A stretch of DNA of 64,000 nt from Guillardia theta CCMP2712 (Eukaryota; Protista; Cryptophyta): positions 604,966 to 668,965 of the forward strand of contig NW_005434646.1 in assembly GCF_000315625.1 (NCBI RefSeq), in the 5' to 3' direction. The notes beneath the pieces are model-generated. The model saw only the letters and a program-made list of their open reading frames with translations. It was not told the origin of the DNA and made no database searches. Positions 41,417 to 48,728 of the stretch are shown piece after piece; position 1 is the stretch's first letter, and the number at the start of each line of letters is the position of its first letter. The position numbers and the translations under genes were made by a program.

Positions 41417-43059
41417 ATGGCGATCTTGTCGAGGGGCATTCATCGCACCTACGAAGTTGGGAGAACTCTGGGAAAAGGGTCGTTTGCTACAGTGAAGGAA
41501 GGAAGACATAGAGACAAGGGCACACTCGTCGCTATCAAGATTGTCGACAAATGGATGAATTCTTTCCATCAATCATCTCTGGAGCAGGAGATCCAGACTA
41601 TGATGAAGGTTTCGCACCCTAACTGCCTCCGTCTGCACGAGGTGTACGACCAATGCGAGAAGACCTACCTGATTCTTGATCTGGCAACCGGAGGAACCGT
41701 CATGGATCGCATCATTGCCCTGGACTTCTTCTCAGAGAAGCAGGCCGCAAAAGTGACAAGAGATGTCCTGAACGCGGTGGAATACCTGCACAACATCGGT
41801 ATCACACACAGAGACCTGAAGCCAGAAAACCTACTCTATGCGTCCAACGATCCAGAATCCAAGTACTATGATACAGTCAAGGTTGCTGACTTTGGACTCT
41901 CGAAATATATGGGTGAGAACGTTTCGATGAAGACTACCTGTGGCACCCCGAATTACATGGCGCCTGAAGTGTTGAATAGTGATGGTTTCGATGGTTATGG
42001 CCCTGAGGTGGACATCTGGTCAGTTGGAGTCATCATCTACACTATGTTGTGTGGCTTCCAGCCTTTTTTCGAGTTCTCAACAGCTGCATTGTTCCAACAG
42101 ATTATGAAGGCTGAGTATTCATTCTTATCTCCTTATTGGGACCAAGTATCGAAAGAAGCGAAAGACCTCATTTCCAAGATGTTGGTTGTTGATCGATCAA
42201 AGAGACTTACAGCAATGCAGTGCTTGAATCACATTTGGTTCGATCAGGCGTACTCAAATGACTCGGTTGTGAGCACCTTGCATGGATCATTGCACACATT
42301 TTTGCTCGTTAGGAAACTTCCCATCTTTGACAACATCGACCCCAAGCTTCAGCAAGAAGTGATCAACATGTTAAAGCCAAAGCAAGTTCCTTGGGGGGAG
42401 AAAGTCATCCAATCAGGAGAAGTTGCAGACTGTATGTACTTCATACAAAGTGGATCAGTATCTGTGATGGTAGATGGGAATGAAATCGACCGTTTGGGTG
42501 CAGGTCAGATCATTTTTCTATCAAGGGGCTTTTTCTAACGAGTCTTTCTCCAGGCGACTTTTTTGGGGAAGTAGCTTTGACTGTCTCAGAACTTCGTACT
42601 GCCGACGTCATCTCGCTTGGAGCACAGTCAGGGACTCGCACAAACGTGGCGTCAAGCACAAGGAACCCTACCGAGCTTCTCCAATTCATGAGATCCGATT
42701 TCGAACAAATCTTGGCTAAGTTCCCCGTACTCCAGACAAGGATGCTTGAAGTCAGCCAGGTGACCGAGATACCCTCGCGCATTGTCGCATGCTGACTTTT
42801 ATCTCTTCAGAAACGTGTTCGTCGAGCCATCTCTTCGCGCAGGCCGTCAGAATCCCTAAGTCCATCAAACCACAATCCATCAAGGACTGCGTCATCAGAG
42901 TCTGAGCATGTCTTCTCCGGCTCTTCCGATTGCTCGCCAGTGCTCTCTCCTGTTTCTGTTAGTCCCGTATCCGCACCTGACCTCGAACTGGAAGCCATCA
43001 AATTCAAGAAAGGAAAGAGCAAGGTTTGGAAGAAAACCAAAGGATGCATCCAGCAATGA
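41417..43059 (+). CDS. CaMK1-like Ser/Thr kinase fused to a C-terminal cyclic-nucleotide-binding domain, with polybasic-CaaX tail (paralog A)
   Basis: GKGSFA, AIK, HRDLKPEN, DFG, APE all intact. CNB GDFFGEVAL..RTADV. Two introns; ends KKGKSKVWKKTKGCIQQ*. Confidence 0.92.
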
Positions 43060-43288
43060 AGACAGTTCTTCTTTATATTTTTTTCTTAAGCTTTCTGCTT
43101 GTACATAATCTATTAACATTCTAGTGAATGAACATGAGTGAATGGGTGAATAGTCAGCACCAACTCTACCTTCTCATATGACAGATCGTTAAATCAGCGA
43201 GCTGATTGAAAAGAATTTATTTTTGAGAGAAGGGATTCAAGAGTCCGCAACAGAAACCTTCGCCACGGAAGAATCAGAGGTTGTGTTC

Positions 43289-44663
43289 TTATGCAGCTTC
43301 CTGATTCATAGGATTTTCTGGAGACTTCTGCCACTGGCACACGCAAGAATGAGTGAGCAAGAACACGCAGTTTGCGCATCATGGAAACTCACGTTCTTGA
43401 AAATTATCTCCTTGATTTGAGAAAGCTTGAGGCCCGGATTTTCAGCCCTGATACCTGGAGCAGCGCTTCAGAGGAATCTTCACAAGTCAGCGAGCGATCA
43501 ACGTGGGATCTCGCGCTCTTCGTACGCCTTGAATGCAGCCTTGCGTCTCCTCTCTGGGTGAGCATCCGACTTCTCGTCCTGGGCACGTCGATTCAGCCAA
43601 CAGGAAGCGAGGCGCTGATAGTCCTTCGCTCAGTTGGGGTCACCTCGGTGTTAAGGTTGGTGAGAAGGTCGGTCGCAGCATCGACACCAGATGCTTCCTT
43701 CCGCTGGATCCCCTTCTCTGCTAGCATGCGGGACTACAATTGTACACTCAAGATCGGCCGGAGGCTCGAGAGCAGGCACACCTCCTCCATCCTTAGGTGA
43801 TTGATGTTTCGCTCGATCTCTGGCTCCTTGGAGGACAATCACTCCCAGCGGCAGAGAGCTGCGACTCAGCTCACCGGCTTCTTCTTCTCCTTCTTGGGAG
43901 GCATGAACATGAGGTTTTGTGCAATCTGCGCCTGTTGTACCGGGACGTTCAGTTGCTCTCGCAGACTCCAAGGGCAAAAGGTTTGTACCTGTGTGACCTT
44001 GGCGGGCTGAGTGGACTTCTTGTTGGACAGGGAGGCAGACTCCTCCTCCTACACGTGGGGCATGCCAGCATGAATGAACACAAGACAAGGAAATCCTATG
44101 ACCTCAAGCTTCTTCCTCTCCTCCTTCCTACGGAGCTCCGCAAGGCGCTTTCCTCGGCGGCAGACTGCATGCAAGGATCAGACTGCGCCCGATGGAAGGA
44201 GAGCCACATACTTGCTTGCTGCCGTCCTTGGATCCCTGCGACCAATAGGCATCCTCTTCTGCTCGGGCTGGCGCGCAAACGTCAGTGACATCGACTTTCA
44301 AAGGGGAGTTCATCAAGAGACAAGTGGTGTTCGTAACAAGCAGCAGGAGAAATGAGTTGAATGTGAAAGCTATGAAGTTTCGAAGATGGAGGAGACTTTC
44401 AGACGAGTGAACAGGACAGCGGGCTGCACGAGTGAGGTGGGTTGAGTCGGCAAAGAAGCAGGCAGAGAAGACTTGGGCGGAGAGGTCAGAGTTGGAGGGG
44501 ATTAGGAGGAGGGAAGGAGAGCAAGGGAGGAGGAAGAGGGAAGGAGAGCAAGGGAGCAGGAAGAGGGAAGGAGAGCAAGGGAGCAGGAGGTCCCACATTT
44601 GGCCTCCTCGGCCTCAGCCTTCTTGTTGGCCTCCCTTGTCTTGGCGCCTTCCTTCTTGGGCAT
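43289..44663 (-). CDS. CCDC124: CCDC124 / Lso2 / Oxs1 family ribosome-associated protein
   Basis: MPKK..AEEDAYW..HPERRRKAAFKAYEEREIPRIRAENPGLKLSQIKEIIFKNWQKSPENPMNQ. Confidence 0.9.
44508..44590. repeat. 27-bp tandem repeat x3 in the first CCDC124 intron
   Basis: GAGGGAAGGAGAGCAAGGGAGCAGGAA units. Confidence 0.85.
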
Positions 44664-44778
44664 CGTGTCGCACCCTATGGTCGGCCGCCGTGACGTGCCG
44701 GGCACACTGAGCCGGCCGAGCAACTGGGGCCCGGCAACCGCCACTGTGAGGGCCCCCGAGTCACTCTAAAGACTTCAT

Positions 44779-44818
44779 ATTGTCCTCGTACTGATTTTTG
44801 ACTTAACTTTGAGTAAAG
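44779..44818. repeat. Second copy of the 40-bp dispersed repeat core
   Basis: ATTGTCCTCGTACTGATTTTTGACTTAACTTTGAGTAAAG, 38/40 identical to 29108-29147. Confidence 0.85.
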
Positions 44819-45444
44819 TGCTGACAGGTGACTACGCTCGGAGGTTGAATCCTCGTGATGATGATGACTGCCTCGGATACCACCCCACCCACCAGCACAA
44901 AATTTGTAAGGTTTGTTGACCCCACCATCACTTCTGTACTTGCTGGTGTACCCATACAATTCATATTGAATAGTACCCGTTCTTGTACATAATCGGCTAT
45001 ACCCCCTTCGTACGGACCTTCAACACCTAACTACCCCTTGGGGTCGATACCTGCTTTTTGCGGATAGAAGTTAAAACACCCTACCCTCTAAAATCCGCTC
45101 ACTCTGTACGGTAGGGTTATCTCTTTGACCACGCTTTACAAGACGAAAGATATTTGTTATGTTTGTTAGCTTAATCGGAGACTTTGAAATCTACACGTAA
45201 GATTTCAACACATGCCAAATAGTCTTCGAAAAGTTGCCATTTCGTTTTTTGAGAGTTTTTGACCGGATGCATGCTGACGCCGCGGCCTGATGTCACTTGG
45301 GACATGAAGTGAAAAACTCTGTTTTCGAATACATTTTGGTATTTTGGTATCATTCATACCCCCTGTTTGCGAAAAAAAATTCTTTTCGGAATCTCGGCAA
45401 ACCCGTAAATTCGGAAAGAGCACAGCGCAGGGCGGCAGAAAGCC

Positions 45445-46566
45445 ATGGTGAAATTAACGTACACAGGAGAGATTAGGACAAACTTCGACGTTGGAGAGAC
45501 GATAGGAAGGGGATCGTTCGCAACTGTCAAACTTTGCACAGATGTCTTCACAAAGCAGCAGTTCGCACTCAAGGTTGTAAGCAAAGATGACCCGGCGTTC
45601 GATGAGAAGAGCTTGGCCCATGAGGTCGACGCGATGATGAGAGTTTCGCACCCCAACTGCGTGCATTTACACGGGGTCTTTGAAGAGAAGGGGAAATTTT
45701 TTCTGGTTCTGGACCTCGTTACTGGCGGGACACTGATGGATCGGATCATTGAGATGAATCACTTCTCGGAACAAGACGCGATTCACGTCACAAGGGACAT
45801 CCTGGTCGCCGTCGAGTATCTGCATAGCATTGGTATCACGCATCGAGACCTGAAGCCTGAAAACTTGCTGTATGCTTCAGGAGACCCGGCGTCCCCGGAC
45901 TACAATACCATCAAGATCGCGGACTTCGGGCTCGCCAAGGTCATGTCAGGAAGGAGCACGATGTCCACTCCCTGCGGCACCCCCAACTACGTGGCGCCGG
46001 AGGTGATCGACCCCGCGAGAGGCTCCAAGGTCTACGGGCCGGAGGTTGACATCTGGTCGCTGGGTGTCATCGTGTATGTCATGCTCTGCGGCTTCCCTCC
46101 GTTCTACCAGACCTCAACGCCCGCCCTGTTCAAGGAGATCTGCAAGGGCGAGTTCGGCTTCCCCTCTCCCTATTGGGATGGGATATCTTCGCAGGCGAGG
46201 GCCTTCATCCTCAAGACGATCGTGAAGCAGCCCAAGAAGAGGATGACGGCGTCTGAGTGCCTTGAGCACCAGTGGATCAAGAGCGGATCGCCAGACGTGC
46301 GAGCTGGGAGCCTGCACAGCTTCCACAAGGCTTTCCTCCTCCTGCGCAAGCTGGATATCTTCGAGAGCATCGACCCCATGCTGCTGCATGAGATCGCCAA
46401 AGTGCTCAAGACCGTCAGAGTTCGAGAGGGGGACTACATCATCCGAGCAGGCGACCAGGCCAACAGCATGTACTTCGTGCACTCGGGCTACGTGCAGGTC
46501 TCTGTGAATGGAAGCAAAGTCGACATGCTCACTTCAGGTATCATCACTGAGATGACGAAGATGGGA

Positions 46567-46627
<61 letters not shown>

Positions 46628-47074
46628 CGATGTTCATGATGACGATGACGATTGTGATACTGGTTGGTCCTGACCTGCTCTGCAGGAGACTTTTTCGGGG
46701 AAGTTGCCCTCACGGTAGCAGCACACCGGACAGCAGACGTGATGGCCCTGGGTCCGATGCACAAGGAGCACGAGAGAGGGTCAGAGCACGTCACCGAGCT
46801 GTTCGAGCTCATGAAGAGCGATCTGGAGGAAATCGTCCGCACGTACCCCCTGCTGGAATCTCGTCTCGAGCGTGTCGGGAAGGCTCGGTTCAGGAGGGCT
46901 TCCTGTAGCTCAAGTCCGGAGCGAAAGGATACCGTCGATTGTCACAACGCTCCTCCGTCTCCTCGCCGGTCATATCGGAAGCTCTCGGACGTTGCGAGGA
47001 GAAATAGTGTGGATGGCCTCGAAAACTTGAAGAAGATCAAATCCAGGCGATGGAAAGCTTGCGTCCAGCAGTGA
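45445..47074 (+). CDS. CaMK1-like kinase + CNB domain + polybasic-CaaX tail (paralog B)
   Basis: GRGSFA, ALK, HRDLKPEN, DFG, APE intact. GDFFGEVAL..RTADV. Intron 46538-46685; ends KKIKSRRWKACVQQ*. Confidence 0.92.
46568..46650. repeat. (ATG)n microsatellite inside the kinase B intron
   Basis: Visible tandem array; explains the poly-Met in the ORF track. Confidence 0.95.
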
Positions 47075-47357
47075 TTGGTGATGGTGTTAATGTTTCTTTT
47101 TTTCTCGGAAGAGATGTTTTATATTGTTTTGCGTGTATCTTGTACAAATAAAGCCTAGTATGTCCCATGCAATCGTGTCAGGCGTCGTTACAAGTTCAAC
47201 TGCAATTGCTGTGGAATGAGGGAAGACGACAGAGACGAACTGCGCATTGACGAATCGCAAAGCCCATCGTGATGACACATGTATCATGTGGATCTTTATG
47301 ATTATTGTGTAAATCTACATATTTTACAGCTGTTCTCCCTCTCGCGATCTGCGGCGT

Positions 47358-48728
47358 TCAGATGTACTCCAGTCGATCGAGGGAGAGCCGTTCACCTCTC
47401 TCCGTCATGGCCTCGCTGATCCAGGATTCCGATGAGGGTGATCTCGTCACGTGCTTGCAGCGAAGCTGAGCCGATCGCATCCTCGCCACCAGCCTCTTCC
47501 ACCACACGGGCTCACGCGCCTCCATCGCCTCCACGTCGGCTGCTCTCATGCAGTACACCTCCATCGCCTCGGCTGTCGTCTCCTCGTTGACATAGCTCAC
47601 TCCGTTTGCAACAATCTGGATCCTCGAGCGCTCGTCCACCTGGTGGTCCAGCAGCCCAAACATGCAGCCTGCAAGACAGGAGTCAGCACAGGTAGAGGAC
47701 GGGGCGAGCAGGTTCCCACCTGTCGACAGCGTCTGCGTCTCGACGCCGTCCACGATCACCCTCACATTTCCGGAGCCCACCAGGAACAGATTTCTCCGCA
47801 GCTCCCACCCCTCTGCGATCACCTCCCCGCTCACTGGGCTCATCAGCTCGAACCTGCCTGTCATGTCCTTGAGCTTCTCGCAAGCCGGGTCGTCAACGAT
47901 GTCCATCTTGCAGAGCAGCTGGAACGCCTTATGGGCAGTGTGACTGTCCCCGTGGGGATGGCAGTTTATGTTGGACCTCATCTTCATCATCCATGGATGC
48001 GACAAGCAGCGAGCGGCGTCGGGGCGTTTCCTGGAGTCGGGCTCCAGCATCCTTGCGACAAGATCTGCCGCGTCCTCTTGACCCTTGCTATCACCCTTGG
48101 ACCTCGGCCTGAGCAGGCCTGCGATCGGACTACGGAGCAACTGGGCAATTCTCCCCCTCGGATTGCTCGTCTCATGCGAATTTGCCTTCAGCAGGCGATG
48201 CAAGATCCTCCCAGCCATGGCTATGTCTTGCGCAGCTACTGACAGCCCCTCTGCGGAAGAGATCTCTTCGATCAGGTAGGAGCTCCCGAACCCTACGATC
48301 TTGACTGTGTCATCGCAAGAGACGATGACGTGCTCCTCCACTAGATTTCCGTGAACGATCCCATTCTCGTGCATGTGGTTGAGCGCGTCCAGGATTTGTG
48401 ACATGATACCTGCAATCCTTGCCTCCGAGAATGCTGCCTGATAAGAGATCTCATCCGCCAGCGTTGCTCCTTCCACGAGGTCCATCACAAGATAAAGATC
48501 CTTGTGCTCCTCGTACACCTCGTGCAGCTGGACGCAGTTTGCGTGAGACAGTCGCATCAAACTCCTTATCTCCGAATTTAGCGACCTCCCCTCCTTCTTG
48601 ATCACCTTTACGGCATACTTGTCGCCGCATCCCCTGTGCGTTGCCTCCATCATTGCGCATCTCGCTCCGCTCCTCATCTTCCTGTTCAGCTCGTAGTGCC
48701 TCCCAAACTCCTTCGACAGGATCGCCAT
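47358..48728 (-). CDS. Pseudokinase paralog C (degenerate CaMK domain + degenerate CNB domain)
   Basis: Starts MAILS like paralog A and keeps AVK. HRD is HGN, DFG is GFG, the Gly loop is lost, and the CNB lacks FGE/RTA. In-frame 51-nt intron 47669-47719 at the same position as in A and B. Confidence 0.85.
   Translation of the reverse strand: MAILSKEFGRHYELNRKMRSGARCAMMEATHRGCGDKYAVKVIKKEGRSLNSEIRSLMRLSHANCVQLHEVYEEHKDLYLVMDLVEGATLADEISYQAAFSEARIAGIMSQILDALNHMHENGIVHGNLVEEHVIVSCDDTVKIVGFGSSYLIEEISSAEGLSVAAQDIAMAGRILHRLLKANSHETSNPRGRIAQLLRSPIAGLLRPRSKGDSKGQEDAADLVARMLEPDSRKRPDAARCLSHPWMMKMRSNINCHPHGDSHTAHKAFQLLCKMDIVDDPACEKLKDMTGRFELMSPVSGEVIAEGWELRRNLFLVGSGNVRVIVDGVETQTLSTGGNLLAPSSTCADSCLAGCMFGLLDHQVDERSRIQIVANGVSYVNEETTAEAMEVYCMRAADVEAMEAREPVWWKRLVARMRSAQLRCKHVTRSPSSESWISEAMTERGERLSLDRLEYI

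What the first reader, a model, noticed from the sequence alone, without database searches (positions are those of the whole stretch)
41417..48728. Three-gene cluster of CaMK-type kinases fused to a cyclic-nucleotide sensor, two with prenylation tails
Seen: three paralogs (41417-43059 +, 45445-47074 +, 47358-48728 -) share a CaMK1-like kinase followed directly by one CNB domain. They share a linker (LHGSLHTFLLVRKLPIF / LHSFHKAFLLLRKLDIF / HTAHKAFQLLCKMDIV) and a phase-1 intron at the same CNB glycine. A and B end in a Lys/Arg cluster plus CIQQ*/CVQQ*. Established: PKG is an AGC kinase with N-terminal CNBs; CaMK1 has its autoinhibitory/CaM-binding helix right after the kinase; Thr after the phosphate-binding Arg (RTA) favours cGMP; polybasic+CaaX ending in Q is a K-Ras-like farnesyl membrane anchor. 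Inference: a convergently built, membrane-tethered, cNMP (perhaps cGMP)-switched CaMK in which the CNB replaces calmodulin control. I do not know this architecture as a described family, but cannot verify novelty.
Basis: partly seen in the sequence, partly recalled or inferred. Interest (0 to 1): 0.85.

Follow-up and report, generated by a model that had tools for sequence, protein, structure and literature searches.

The report
Lipid-anchored CaMK-type kinases with cNMP sensor
A cryptophyte alga carries three neighbouring, expressed genes for a calmodulin-kinase-type enzyme fused to a cyclic-nucleotide sensor and (in two of them) a lipid-anchor tail, a conserved but uncharacterised way of building a cAMP/cGMP-controlled kinase; the third copy is a conserved dead version.

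Summary
Three paralogs sit at 41417-43059 (+), 45445-47074 (+) and 48728-47358 (-). Each has a kinase domain, a fixed ~19-residue linker and one CNB domain. A phase-1 intron lies at the same CNB glycine in all three. Transcript contigs splice all four introns exactly as modelled, and 3'-end RNA reads show all three genes expressed.

The kinase is CAMK-type: its best solved relatives are CaMK1D, CaMK4 and CaMK1, and it has no AGC tail. The CNB phosphate-binding cassette (G..FGE..R.A) is invariant in 32 family members. The linker is the most conserved segment. In an AlphaFold model it lies where the autoinhibitory helix of CaMKII, CASK and DAPK lies.

A and B end in a basic cluster plus CIQQ/CVQQ. 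21 of 62 family members end in C-x-x-X, against 3 of 255 other retrieved proteins. Most orthologs also start with MGILSKG, a myristoylation motif that A, B and C lack.

Gene C is a pseudokinase (HGN, GFG, activation-loop deletion) with a dead cassette, and Hanusia phi conserves it.

Every named member is a cryptophyte, and I found no paper characterising the architecture. cGMP preference, ligand gating and prenylation remain inferences. First-stage notes flag the same architecture at two other places in this genome.

The parts
41417..43059 (+). Gene A CDS (exons 41417-42503, 42554-42759, 42811-43059), 513 aa: CAMK kinase, linker, CNB, disordered Ser/Pro tail, polybasic stretch plus CIQQ. Poly(A) at about 43150.
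   Evidence: model; both introns spliced in X1/X2 contigs, poly(A) reads; Pfam; 88.6% identical full-length ortholog P0002 in Hanusia phi.
41450..42241 (+). Gene A kinase domain (aa 12-275) with intact GKGSFA, VAIK, HRDLKPEN, DFG, the activation-loop Thr (KTTCGTP) and APE.
   Evidence: Pkinase 4.9e-74; motif coordinates; best PDB hits are CaMK1D/4/1.
42278..42328 (+). Gene A linker helix LHGSLHTFLLVRKLPIF (aa 288-304). It is the candidate autoinhibitory helix and runs straight into the first CNB helix.
   Evidence: most conserved segment, mean 0.86; model helix 291-300 falls within the range aligned to the regulatory segments of autoinhibited CaMKII/CASK/DAPK2.
42503..42609 (+). Gene A phosphate-binding cassette GDFFGEVALTVSELRTADV (aa 363-381), interrupted by the phase-1 intron 42504-42553 in the first Gly codon.
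   Evidence: (G, F, G, E, L, R and A invariant in 32 sequences).
43000..43056 (+). Gene A tail KFKKGKSKVWKKTKG plus CIQQ: polybasic stretch and C-terminal Cys-x-x-X.
   Evidence: the Hanusia ortholog ends KKRKGKIWKKTKGCIQQ.
45445..47074 (+). Gene B CDS (exons 45445-46537, 46686-47074), 493 aa. Same architecture as A: cassette GDFFGEVALTVAAHRTADV (46537-46741 across the intron), linker LHSFHKAFLLLRKLDIF (46312-46362), tail KKIKSRRWKA plus CVQQ (47030-47071).
   Evidence: intron spliced in X1 and X2, 3' reads; Pkinase 3.9e-72.
47358..48728 (-). Gene C CDS (exons 48728-47720, 47668-47358), 439 aa, a pseudokinase. It has RSGARC for the Gly loop, HGNLVEEH for HRDLKPEN (48330-48353), GFG for DFG (48285-48293) and an 18-residue activation-segment deletion. 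The linker HTAHKAFQLLCKMDIV is retained (47895-47942). The cassette is degenerate, GCMFGLLDHQVDERSRIQIV (47610-47720). No CaaX. Poly(A) at about 47282.
   Evidence: spliced and expressed; Hanusia ortholog P0164, 72% identical, carries the same substitutions and deletion.

Best explanation
A and B encode active CAMK-group Ser/Thr kinases in which the calmodulin-binding part of the CaMK regulatory segment is replaced by a covalently fused cyclic-nucleotide-binding domain.

Proposed mechanism (inferred, not shown):
- The conserved helix right after the kinase (L-H-x-x-H-[RK]-A-F-L-L-x-R-K-L) docks on the kinase like the autoinhibitory aR1 helix of CaMKI/II.
- That helix is continuous with the N-terminal helix of the CNB.
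- cAMP or cGMP binding to the intact cassette (FGE...RTA) rearranges the CNB helices, pulls the helix off and activates the kinase.
- The logic matches a CDPK, where a fused Ca sensor follows the junction helix, but with a cNMP sensor instead.
- A disordered ~70-residue tail ending in a basic cluster plus C-[IV]-Q-Q is most likely farnesylated and holds the enzyme at a membrane.

The ancestral cryptophyte form, including paralog L001 of this genome, also has an MGILSKG myristoylation start.

Gene C is a conserved, expressed paralog with a dead kinase and a dead sensor. It keeps only the fold and the linker, and probably acts as a scaffold or decoy.

Shown: gene structures, splicing, expression, domain identities, residue conservation, taxonomic spread.
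Inferred: ligand binding, direction of regulation, prenylation, role of C.
For: Real spliced transcripts join the kinase, CNB and CaaX exons.

CAMK identity:
- Best solved relatives are CaMK1D 1.6e-70, CaMK4 and CaMK1.
- The Foldseek/VIA top hits are all CAMK members.
- No Pkinase_C tail.
- The catalytic motifs are intact in A and B.

CNB:
- Pfam cNMP_binding scores 1e-14 on the spliced ortholog.
- Cassette residues G364, F367, G368, E369, L372, R378 and A380 are invariant in 32 members.

Coupling of kinase and CNB:
- The kinase-to-CNB spacing is 19-21 residues in 55 of 62 proteins.
- The linker helix is the best conserved segment (0.86, against 0.75 for the kinase and 0.66 for the CNB).
- Even the dead copy C retains the linker motif.
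- In the AF2 model (pLDDT 75.9, pTM 0.73), residues 5-307 superpose on autoinhibited CaMKII (5vlo 7-299, 2vn9 to 304), CASK (5-303) and DAPK2 (2-304) at Z about 34 and rmsd 2.2-2.5 A. Helix 291-300 therefore occupies the regulatory-helix position.

Anchors:
- 21 of 62 family proteins end in C-x-x-X (CVQS, CSQQ, CTQS, CHQQ, CVVS, CAVM, CTIS and others), against 3 of 255 non-family proteins in the same retrieval.
- 16 of 62 start with MG, and 9 have both.
- Own-genome paralogs L001 and L003 end in CSQQ and CHQQ.

A cNMP supply exists: at least 81 class III cyclase domain matches in the genome.
Against: - No biochemical data exist for any member.
- The linker helix has only moderate confidence (pLDDT 66-75). 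AF2 may place it by analogy to CAMK homologs.
- A sequence search with the linker alone finds only a non-significant match to the CDPK1 junction (E 0.64).
- The split-chain complex test gave no verdict.
- Gln at a2 is not a canonical farnesyltransferase determinant. Only one weak prenyltransferase alpha-repeat hit was found in the genome.
- A, B and C have lost the Gly2 that most orthologs carry.
- Which nucleotide binds, and whether binding activates or inhibits, is unknown.
- The basic-hydrophobic linker could still bind calmodulin.
Confidence: 0.55

Rival explanations
1. They are still Ca2+/calmodulin-regulated CaMKI-like kinases. The CNB is an accessory module for localisation, dimerisation or a second input, not the switch.
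For: The kinase is closest to CaMK1/CaMK4, and JGI names members 'calcium/calmodulin-dependent protein kinase I'. The linker RAFLLIRKL is basic-hydrophobic, as calmodulin targets are (sequence). The activation-loop Thr, which CaMKK phosphorylates in CaMKI, is invariant.
Against: Only about 19 residues separate the kinase from the CNB. The linker is already assigned to the aR1-like helix and the first CNB helix, leaving no separate segment for a CaM-binding R2 helix. The invariance of the cNMP-contacting residues argues that the nucleotide is a real input.
Confidence: 0.15
2. The CNB is a ligand-free structural or autoregulatory domain, as in KCNH-type CNB-homology domains, or it binds something other than cAMP/cGMP. 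On this reading the kinases are not cNMP-switched.
For: Gene C shows that the fold persists in this family without a functional cassette. No member has been assayed. The literature searches found no characterisation.
Against: In A, B and all 32 aligned members, the Gly, the Glu of FGE and the Arg-x-Ala of the cassette are invariant. Ligand-free CNB-homology domains have lost this signature (from memory). Pfam cNMP_binding scores well above its cut-off.
Confidence: 0.12
3. They are ordinary cGMP-dependent protein kinase (PKG) orthologs, as UniRef's automatic names say.
For: UniRef names several members 'cGMP-dependent protein kinase'. The best PDB sequence match of the CNB is Plasmodium PKG CNB-D.
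Against: The domain order is reversed, with one C-terminal CNB rather than 2-4 N-terminal ones. The kinase is CAMK, not AGC. There is no AGC C-tail. PKG chains appear among the top PDB hits only because the kinase and CNB stretches add up.
Confidence: 0.03
4. The fusion is an artefact of reading adjacent ORFs together, so kinase, CNB and tail would be separate genes.
For: The reference G. theta models of paralogs are kinase-only (P0039 297 aa, P0107 298 aa).
Against: Transcript contigs from two independent runs span the kinase exon, the CNB exon and the tail exon with exact GT..AG splicing. Dozens of full-length transcriptome proteins from other cryptophytes have the same order and spacing.
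Confidence: 0.01

Closest known systems
CaMKI / CaMKII / CaMKIV (CAMK group, autoinhibited by a C-terminal regulatory helix)
   Same: The kinase domain is 36-41% identical to these and they are its best sequence and structure matches. A conserved helix follows the kinase and models into the aR1 autoinhibitory position. The activation-loop Thr is conserved.
   Different: There is no room for a calmodulin-binding segment. A CNB domain starts about 19 residues after the kinase. No CaMKII association domain is present. Lipid-anchor motifs are present.
CDPKs of plants and alveolates (CAMK kinase, junction helix, fused calmodulin-like sensor)
   Same: Same design logic: a CAMK kinase followed directly by an autoinhibitory or junction helix and a covalently fused second-messenger sensor. 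The CDPK1 junction is the only PDB segment the linker aligns to, and only weakly. Many CDPKs are also N-myristoylated (from memory).
   Different: The sensor here is a CNB beta-barrel for cyclic nucleotides, not EF hands for Ca2+. This family adds a C-terminal CaaX.
cGMP-dependent protein kinase (PKG) and PKA
   Same: A Ser/Thr kinase is combined with PF00027 CNB domains. The cassette FGE...RTA closely resembles PfPKG CNB-D, FGERALLYDEPRTA.
   Different: PKG and PKA catalytic domains are AGC kinases with an AGC tail. PKG's CNBs are N-terminal and tandem, and PKA's sit on a separate subunit. Here a CAMK kinase carries a single C-terminal CNB.
Phytophthora infestans CAMK kinases with cNMP-binding domains (kinome survey)
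   Same: Table 2 of PMC3019232 lists 'cNMP binding' among the accessory domains of AGC and CAMK kinases. So a CAMK plus CNB combination has been recorded in another lineage.
   Different: It is only tabulated, without description or assay. Domain order, linker and lipid motifs are not given. No oomycete protein appeared among the family hits here, so it may be an independent fusion.
K-Ras4B-type polybasic plus CaaX membrane anchor; Ydj1 CASQ 'shunted' CaaX
   Same: A basic cluster lies immediately upstream of a C-terminal Cys-x-x-X with X = Q, S or M, which from established knowledge is the farnesyltransferase class. Ydj1's CASQ (PMC5014548, seen) shows that a non-aliphatic a2 with X = Q can be farnesylated.
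   Different: a2 is Gln in A and B (CIQQ, CVQQ) and in most orthologs (C-x-Q-[QS]), which is not the canonical aliphatic residue. Modification is untested in cryptophytes.
Dictyostelium GbpC (from memory): a non-AGC kinase with C-terminal CNB domains
   Same: It is a precedent for cGMP control of a non-AGC kinase through CNBs placed C-terminal to the kinase.
   Different: GbpC is a large ROCO/TKL multidomain protein with two CNBs, RasGEF and GRAM domains. It is not a compact CAMK. This comparison was not tested here.

Membership tests
CAMK group (CaMK1-like) protein kinase | Catalytic domain most similar to CaMK1/2/4, DCLK and DAPK rather than to AGC or other groups | tested here: met
   the top PDB hits are CaMK1D (1.6e-70), CaMK4, CaMK1, CaMK1G, DCLK1 and CaMKII; the structural top hits are all CAMK members (Z about 34). 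No full reference phylogeny was made.
CAMK group (CaMK1-like) protein kinase | Intact catalytic residues (Gly loop, VAIK Lys, aC Glu, HRD, DFG, APE) | tested here: met
   Met for A and B. Not met for C, which has HGN, GFG, a degenerate Gly loop and an activation-segment deletion.
CAMK group (CaMK1-like) protein kinase | Autoinhibitory helix directly after the kinase domain | tested here: inconclusive
   AF2 helix 291-300 lies within the range superposed on the regulatory segments of autoinhibited CaMKII/CASK/DAPK2. Its pLDDT is only 66-75, the linker-only sequence search is not significant, and the complex test gave no verdict.
CAMK group (CaMK1-like) protein kinase | Calmodulin-binding segment after the autoinhibitory helix | tested here: not met
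   The CNB domain begins 19-21 residues after the kinase domain in 55 of 62 members, so no separate segment exists. CaM binding to the linker itself is not testable with these tools.
cGMP-dependent protein kinase (PKG, AGC group) | AGC kinase domain with AGC C-terminal tail (Pkinase_C) | tested here: not met
   No PF00433 hit. The best kinase relatives are CAMK.
cGMP-dependent protein kinase (PKG, AGC group) | Tandem CNB domains N-terminal to the kinase | tested here: not met
   A single CNB lies C-terminal to the kinase in all 62 members.
Cyclic nucleotide-binding domain (PF00027), ligand-competent | Pfam match above the gathering score | tested here: met
   P0002 scores 54.7 bits and P0004 48.2 bits against a cut-off of 27.5. 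Exon 1 of A and B alone score 28.0 and 29.9. The Hanusia ortholog of C gives no hit.
Cyclic nucleotide-binding domain (PF00027), ligand-competent | Phosphate-binding cassette G-x-x-F-G-E ... R-[ST/A]-A with the Glu and the Arg | tested here: met
   Invariant in 32 members, and A and B carry the same motif. Not met in C or its Hanusia ortholog, which have FGLL...SRIQ.
Cyclic nucleotide-binding domain (PF00027), ligand-competent | cGMP-selectivity determinants of PKG type (beta5 Arg, capping residues) | tested here: not met
   In the HMMER alignment to PfPKG CNB-D, the LRTL Arg aligns with Asp of EIDRL. The Thr of RTA is not diagnostic by itself (established knowledge). Ligand preference stays open.
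CaaX-prenylated protein (farnesyl type) with polybasic region | Cys at -4 with X = Q/S/M/A, conserved in orthologs | tested here: met
   A ends CIQQ and B ends CVQQ. 21 of 62 family proteins end in C-x-x-X, against 3 of 255 controls. Paralogs L001 and L003 end CSQQ and CHQQ.
CaaX-prenylated protein (farnesyl type) with polybasic region | Aliphatic a1 and a2 | tested here: not met
   a2 is Gln in A, B and most orthologs. More distant members have canonical CVVS, CTIS or CAVM.
CaaX-prenylated protein (farnesyl type) with polybasic region | Actual lipid modification and membrane localisation | not testable with these tools
   This needs mass spectrometry or localisation experiments. The genome search for the prenyltransferase alpha repeat gave one weak hit.
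Pseudokinase (gene C) | Loss of the catalytic Asp (HRD), the Mg-binding Asp (DFG), the Gly loop and the activation segment, while the ORF is kept and expressed | tested here: met
   (HGNLVEEH, GFG, RSGARC, 18-residue deletion). (spliced and polyadenylated, with the highest 3' read depth of the three). (the same changes in the Hanusia phi ortholog at 72% identity).

The most novel reading that the evidence does not exclude
Cryptophytes evolved a third, independent design of cyclic-nucleotide-dependent protein kinase. It is a compact CAMK in which the calmodulin-binding segment is replaced by a fused CNB that gates the CaMK autoinhibitory helix. The enzyme is held at membranes by interchangeable anchors: an N-myristoyl start, a polybasic stretch plus a lineage-typical C-x-Q-[QS] prenylation box, or a tail-anchor helix. 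In the Guillardia/Hanusia lineage it is accompanied by a conserved dead paralog that regulates or scaffolds the active ones.
Probability: 0.45. Interest if true: 0.72.

Novelty: new variant of a known kind. Interest (0 to 1): 0.6.

Why it matters
Known cyclic-nucleotide control of kinases uses AGC kinases: PKA with a separate R subunit, and PKG with N-terminal CNBs. A CAMK scaffold gated by a C-terminal CNB would show that the CaMK/CDPK plan, autoinhibitory helix plus sensor, can be re-wired to a different second messenger.

It would also give cryptophytes a direct, membrane-local effector for cNMP signals. The genome has dozens of cyclase domains. Cryptophyte photobehaviour is already a source of optogenetic tools.

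The protein would be a compact single-chain cNMP-activated kinase, which could be useful as a tool.

The family is easy to test. The proteins are about 500 residues, soluble once the tail is removed, and full-length transcripts are available from several genera. The conserved dead paralog is a natural control.

The result also corrects two misleading automatic names, 'PKG' and 'CaMKI'. It further shows that the reference models of two paralogs stop after the kinase domain.

Tried and rejected
1. Complex prediction with the kinase (1-284) and linker plus CNB (285-445) as separate chains scored 0.00, which is no verdict. I do not use it as evidence either way.
2. A PDB sequence search with the linker alone (P0002 262-322) found only the CDPK1 junction at E 0.64, which is not significant.
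3. The maximum-likelihood tree of 44 family and outgroup proteins did not finish its careful search. In the quick tree, A pairs with P0002, B with P0025 and C with P0164. C sits on a very long branch with deviant composition, so I do not use its placement or the order of duplications.
4. The ESM Atlas feature search lists many Pkinase plus cNMP_binding clusters in Chlorophyta, Ciliophora and bacteria, but gives no domain order. It cannot say whether this architecture exists outside cryptophytes. The Atlas fold search found one fragment cluster with the same order (no taxa recorded) and a Response_reg/Pkinase/cNMP cluster in green algae.
5. The genome search for the prenyltransferase alpha repeat gave one weak hit with an in-frame stop, which is inconclusive for the presence of farnesyltransferase.
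6. Seven literature searches found no characterised CAMK with a C-terminal CNB. The T. cruzi preprint and the Cryptosporidium, trypanosomatid and Ostreococcus kinome papers turned out not to describe it.
7. The neighbouring genes are a PRMT-like methyltransferase, a DnaJ protein, UDPGP and a CCDC124-like protein. They show no functional link, so this is a tandem paralog cluster and not an operon-like unit.
8. I rejected the reading that RTA implies cGMP (and established knowledge).

Full report
**What organism.** The window is eukaryotic DNA with many 48-150 nt GT..AG introns. The assembly has 87,145,349 bases in 669 contigs. Its contigs C13 (1,062,263 bp) and C11 (1,098,122 bp) have the same lengths as the contigs that carry the NCBI proteins GUITHDRAFT_157273 and GUITHDRAFT_65968 of Guillardia theta CCMP2712. 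The genome is therefore the cryptophyte G. theta. The closest other species in the hits is Hanusia phi: 93% identity to the first exon of gene A and 88.6% over the whole protein.

**The observation.** I rebuilt the three genes from the sequence.
- A: 41417-42503, 42554-42759, 42811-43059 (+), 513 aa.
- B: 45445-46537, 46686-47074 (+), 493 aa.
- C: 48728-47720, 47668-47358 (-), 439 aa.

In all three, a phase-1 intron splits the Gly codon that opens the phosphate-binding cassette (G|DFFGE in A and B, G|CMFG in C). A has a second intron before the tail exon. Reads were laid on 42450-48440. Transcript contigs of two runs (X1, X2) splice all four introns exactly at the modelled GT..AG sites. Raw 3'-biased RNA-seq reads (X19) show poly(A) tails at about 43150 (A) and about 47282 (C, minus strand), and cover the 3' ends of A, B and C at depths of roughly 25, 23 and 56. 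The exons for kinase, CNB and tail are therefore joined in real mRNAs, and all three genes are expressed. The quoted linker strings, RTA, CIQQ* and CVQQ* are present as written.

**Domain identities.**
- Pfam gives Pkinase at 4.9e-74 (A) and 3.9e-72 (B). The first half of cNMP_binding is already over its cut-off from exon 1 alone.
- The spliced Hanusia ortholog P0002 scores Pkinase 1e-72 and cNMP_binding 1e-14. No AGC tail domain is found.
- Against the PDB, the best sequence relatives are CaMK1D (1.6e-70), CaMK4, CaMK1, CaMK1G, DCLK1 and CaMKII. Plasmodium PKG ranks lower, and only because its kinase and CNB stretches add up.
- The CNB alone aligns best to PfPKG CNB-D, then to PKA R subunits, HCN and MloK1.
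- In the big protein database, its nearest non-family relatives are bacterial cyclic-nucleotide-gated K+ channels at 38% identity.

So this is a CAMK-type kinase with one C-terminal CNB. The scaffold and the domain order both differ from PKG.

**The family.** Searches returned about 60 proteins with the kinase-then-CNB order. Every one that carries an organism name is a cryptophyte: Guillardia, Hanusia, Hemiselmis, Rhodomonas, Cryptomonas or Baffinella. Automatic names are 'cGMP-dependent protein kinase' (UniRef) or 'calcium/calmodulin-dependent protein kinase I' (JGI).

The G. theta genome holds at least six further kinase-CNB genes (L001, L002, L003, L004, L006, L011). Three of them break at the same position as the CNB intron. 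The reference models of two paralogs stop after the kinase domain (P0039 297 aa, P0107 298 aa), which may be why the architecture has drawn no attention.

In a 32-sequence alignment, the ligand-contacting cassette residues are invariant (G364, F367, G368, E369, L372, R378, A380 in P0002 numbering). So are the catalytic residues and the activation-loop Thr.

**Linker.**
- The distance from the end of the kinase profile to the start of the CNB profile is 19-21 residues in 55 of 62 proteins.
- The 19-residue linker helix is the most conserved segment of the protein. Its mean column conservation is 0.86, against 0.75 for the kinase, 0.66 for the CNB and 0.19 for the tail.
- An AlphaFold2 model of P0002 built with the family alignment has mean pLDDT 75.9 and pTM 0.73. 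It has a helix at 291-300, followed by the CNB helix 310-319, the beta-barrel, the cassette helix 369-373 and C-helices 410-442. Residues 446-518 are disordered.
- Structural alignment puts model residues 5-307 onto autoinhibited CaMKII (5vlo 7-299, 2vn9 up to 304), CASK (5-303) and DAPK2 (2-304) at Z about 34 and rmsd 2.2-2.5 A over about 292 residues. The linker helix therefore occupies the place of the CAMK autoregulatory helix.

The helix has only moderate confidence. AF2 may borrow the placement from homologs. The linker alone has no significant sequence match. A split-chain complex prediction gave no verdict.

**Mechanism proposed (inference).** The aR1-like helix blocks the kinase, as in CaMKI/II. 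Because it is continuous with the first CNB helix, cNMP binding to the cassette and the resulting movement of the CNB helices would release it. The closest functional analogy is a CDPK, with a CNB in place of the calmodulin-like domain. There is no room for a separate calmodulin-binding segment.

Which nucleotide binds is open. RTA also occurs in HCN channels (from memory). The PKG-type beta5 Arg aligns with Asp here. The genome has at least 81 class III cyclase domain matches, so a supply of cNMP is plausible.

**Membrane anchors.** A and B end in a basic cluster plus CIQQ/CVQQ.
- In the family, 21 of 62 proteins end in C-x-x-X: CVQS x4, CSQQ x4, CTQS x2, CVVS x2, and single cases of CHQQ, CNQQ, CKQQ, CSHQ, CAVM, CRVS, CTIS, CVCS and CIQQ.
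- Only 3 of 255 non-family proteins in the same retrieval do so.
- Own-genome paralogs L001 and L003 end in KKKKACSQQ* and WCHQQ*.
- Sixteen of 62 start with MG (13 with MGILSKG), which is the N-myristoylation consensus, and nine have both motifs.
- L001 of this genome starts MGILSKG directly after upstream stop codons. A and C start MAILS and B starts MVKLT, so the window copies have lost Gly2.
- Other subfamilies end in a hydrophobic tail-anchor-like segment (P0019) or in basic amphipathic tails (P0030, P0031).

Repeated and varied anchoring devices argue that membrane attachment matters for the family. Even so, C-x-Q-[QS] has a non-aliphatic a2, so it is not a K-Ras-type canonical box. Broad farnesyltransferase reactivity and the CASQ of Ydj1 (10.1101/2023.02.06.527295 and PMC5014548, seen) make modification plausible but not shown.

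**Gene C.** C has RSGARC in place of the Gly loop, HGNLVEEH for HRDLKPEN, GFG for DFG and an 18-residue deletion of the activation segment and P+1 loop. Its cassette, FGLLDHQVDERSRIQIV, lacks the Glu and has Ser at the Arg position. Its CNB is not detected by the family query in the genome, nor by Pfam in its Hanusia ortholog.

C is nevertheless spliced, polyadenylated and expressed. Its Hanusia ortholog P0164 is 72% identical and carries the same substitutions and the same deletion. The decay therefore predates the split of the two genera, and the gene has been kept. It retains the linker motif (H..HKAF.LL.KMDI). It cannot be a cNMP-switched kinase, so a scaffold or decoy role is the likely reading. 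Note s1-433962 of the scan said the same, and I confirm it.

The Hanusia proteins for A, B and C carry ids 765521-...AAC.4.7 and .9. Read as scaffold and gene numbers, these suggest the cluster is syntenic there. That is an inference from the names alone.

**Known or new.** Seven full-text searches found no paper that characterises a CAMK with a C-terminal CNB. The nearest mention is Table 2 of the Phytophthora infestans kinome, which lists cNMP-binding domains in 'AGC, CAMK' kinases without comment (PMC3019232). The trypanosomatid kinome paper states that cNMP domains were otherwise restricted to AGC kinases (PMC1266030).

Pkinase plus cNMP_binding clusters exist in green algae, ciliates and bacteria, but their domain order was not available. 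I therefore cannot say the design is unique to cryptophytes. The sequences themselves are already public under misleading automatic names.

I rate this a new variant of a known kind, cyclic-nucleotide-dependent kinases. It is well supported as a conserved, expressed architecture, and it is untested in function. First-stage notes s1-431767 and s1-434800 flag the same architecture elsewhere in this genome. They match the paralogs and the tail-anchored form seen here.

Noticed in passing
window 43203-44600 (-): A gene with about ten tiny introns (48-65 nt, one with non-canonical ends and a 14-nt inserted piece at 44151/44212) lies between A and B, convergent with A. Its spliced C-terminus (…HPERRRKAAFKAYEEREIPRIRAENPGLKLSQIKEIIFKNWQKSPENPMNQ…) looks like CCDC124/Lso2-type ribosome hibernation factors, judged from memory. 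It was not searched.
   Followed up: partly
window 44779-44820: A roughly 40-nt element (TCCTCGTACTGATTTTT[G/A]ACTTAACTTTGAGTAAAG) is a dispersed repeat. It has 74 copies with at most 2 mismatches across the genome, on both strands. Its summed depth is about 20,000 in a DNA run where flanking DNA is about 5, and it is abundant in RNA contigs with many different flanks. Its nature is unexplained.
   Followed up: partly
window 46557-46664: B's CNB intron holds a long (ATG)n microsatellite that reads as poly-Met in frame. Gene callers that read through it produced truncated proteins in close relatives (P0028, P0025).
   Followed up: no
window 47074-47358: B and C are convergent. Their 3' ends lie within about 30-100 nt of each other, with B reads reaching about 47250 and the C poly(A) at about 47282. 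One transcript assembly merges them into a single contig (X1 record 4). A and the CCDC124-like gene are similarly close (about 43150 versus about 43203).
   Followed up: no
window 42811-42834 (A), 46883-46906 (B); family consensus ARV[KR]RA[AS]: A conserved basic motif sits directly after the CNB C-helix: A has KRVRRAIS, B has ARFRRASC, and the consensus is ARVKRAA. It resembles an R-R-x-S/A kinase substrate or pseudosubstrate site. It could be an autophosphorylation site or a second autoinhibitory element. Not tested.
   Followed up: no
L001 (G000:C32:664400-668400): This paralog in the same genome has the full 'canonical' cryptophyte form. It starts MGILSKG after upstream stops and ends KKKKACSQQ*. 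It would be the best representative for experiments on dual lipidation.
   Followed up: partly
G000 contigs C13 and C11 (P0039, P0107): The reference G. theta protein models of two family paralogs contain only the kinase domain (297 and 298 aa). The loci, however, encode a CNB downstream (L002, L006). The public models appear truncated.
   Followed up: partly
whole genome G000: There are at least 81 matches to the class III nucleotidyl cyclase domain, many in large ORFs with two domains each. First-stage notes list CNB domains fused to many other effectors in this genome. Cyclic-nucleotide signalling seems strongly expanded in this alga.
   Followed up: no
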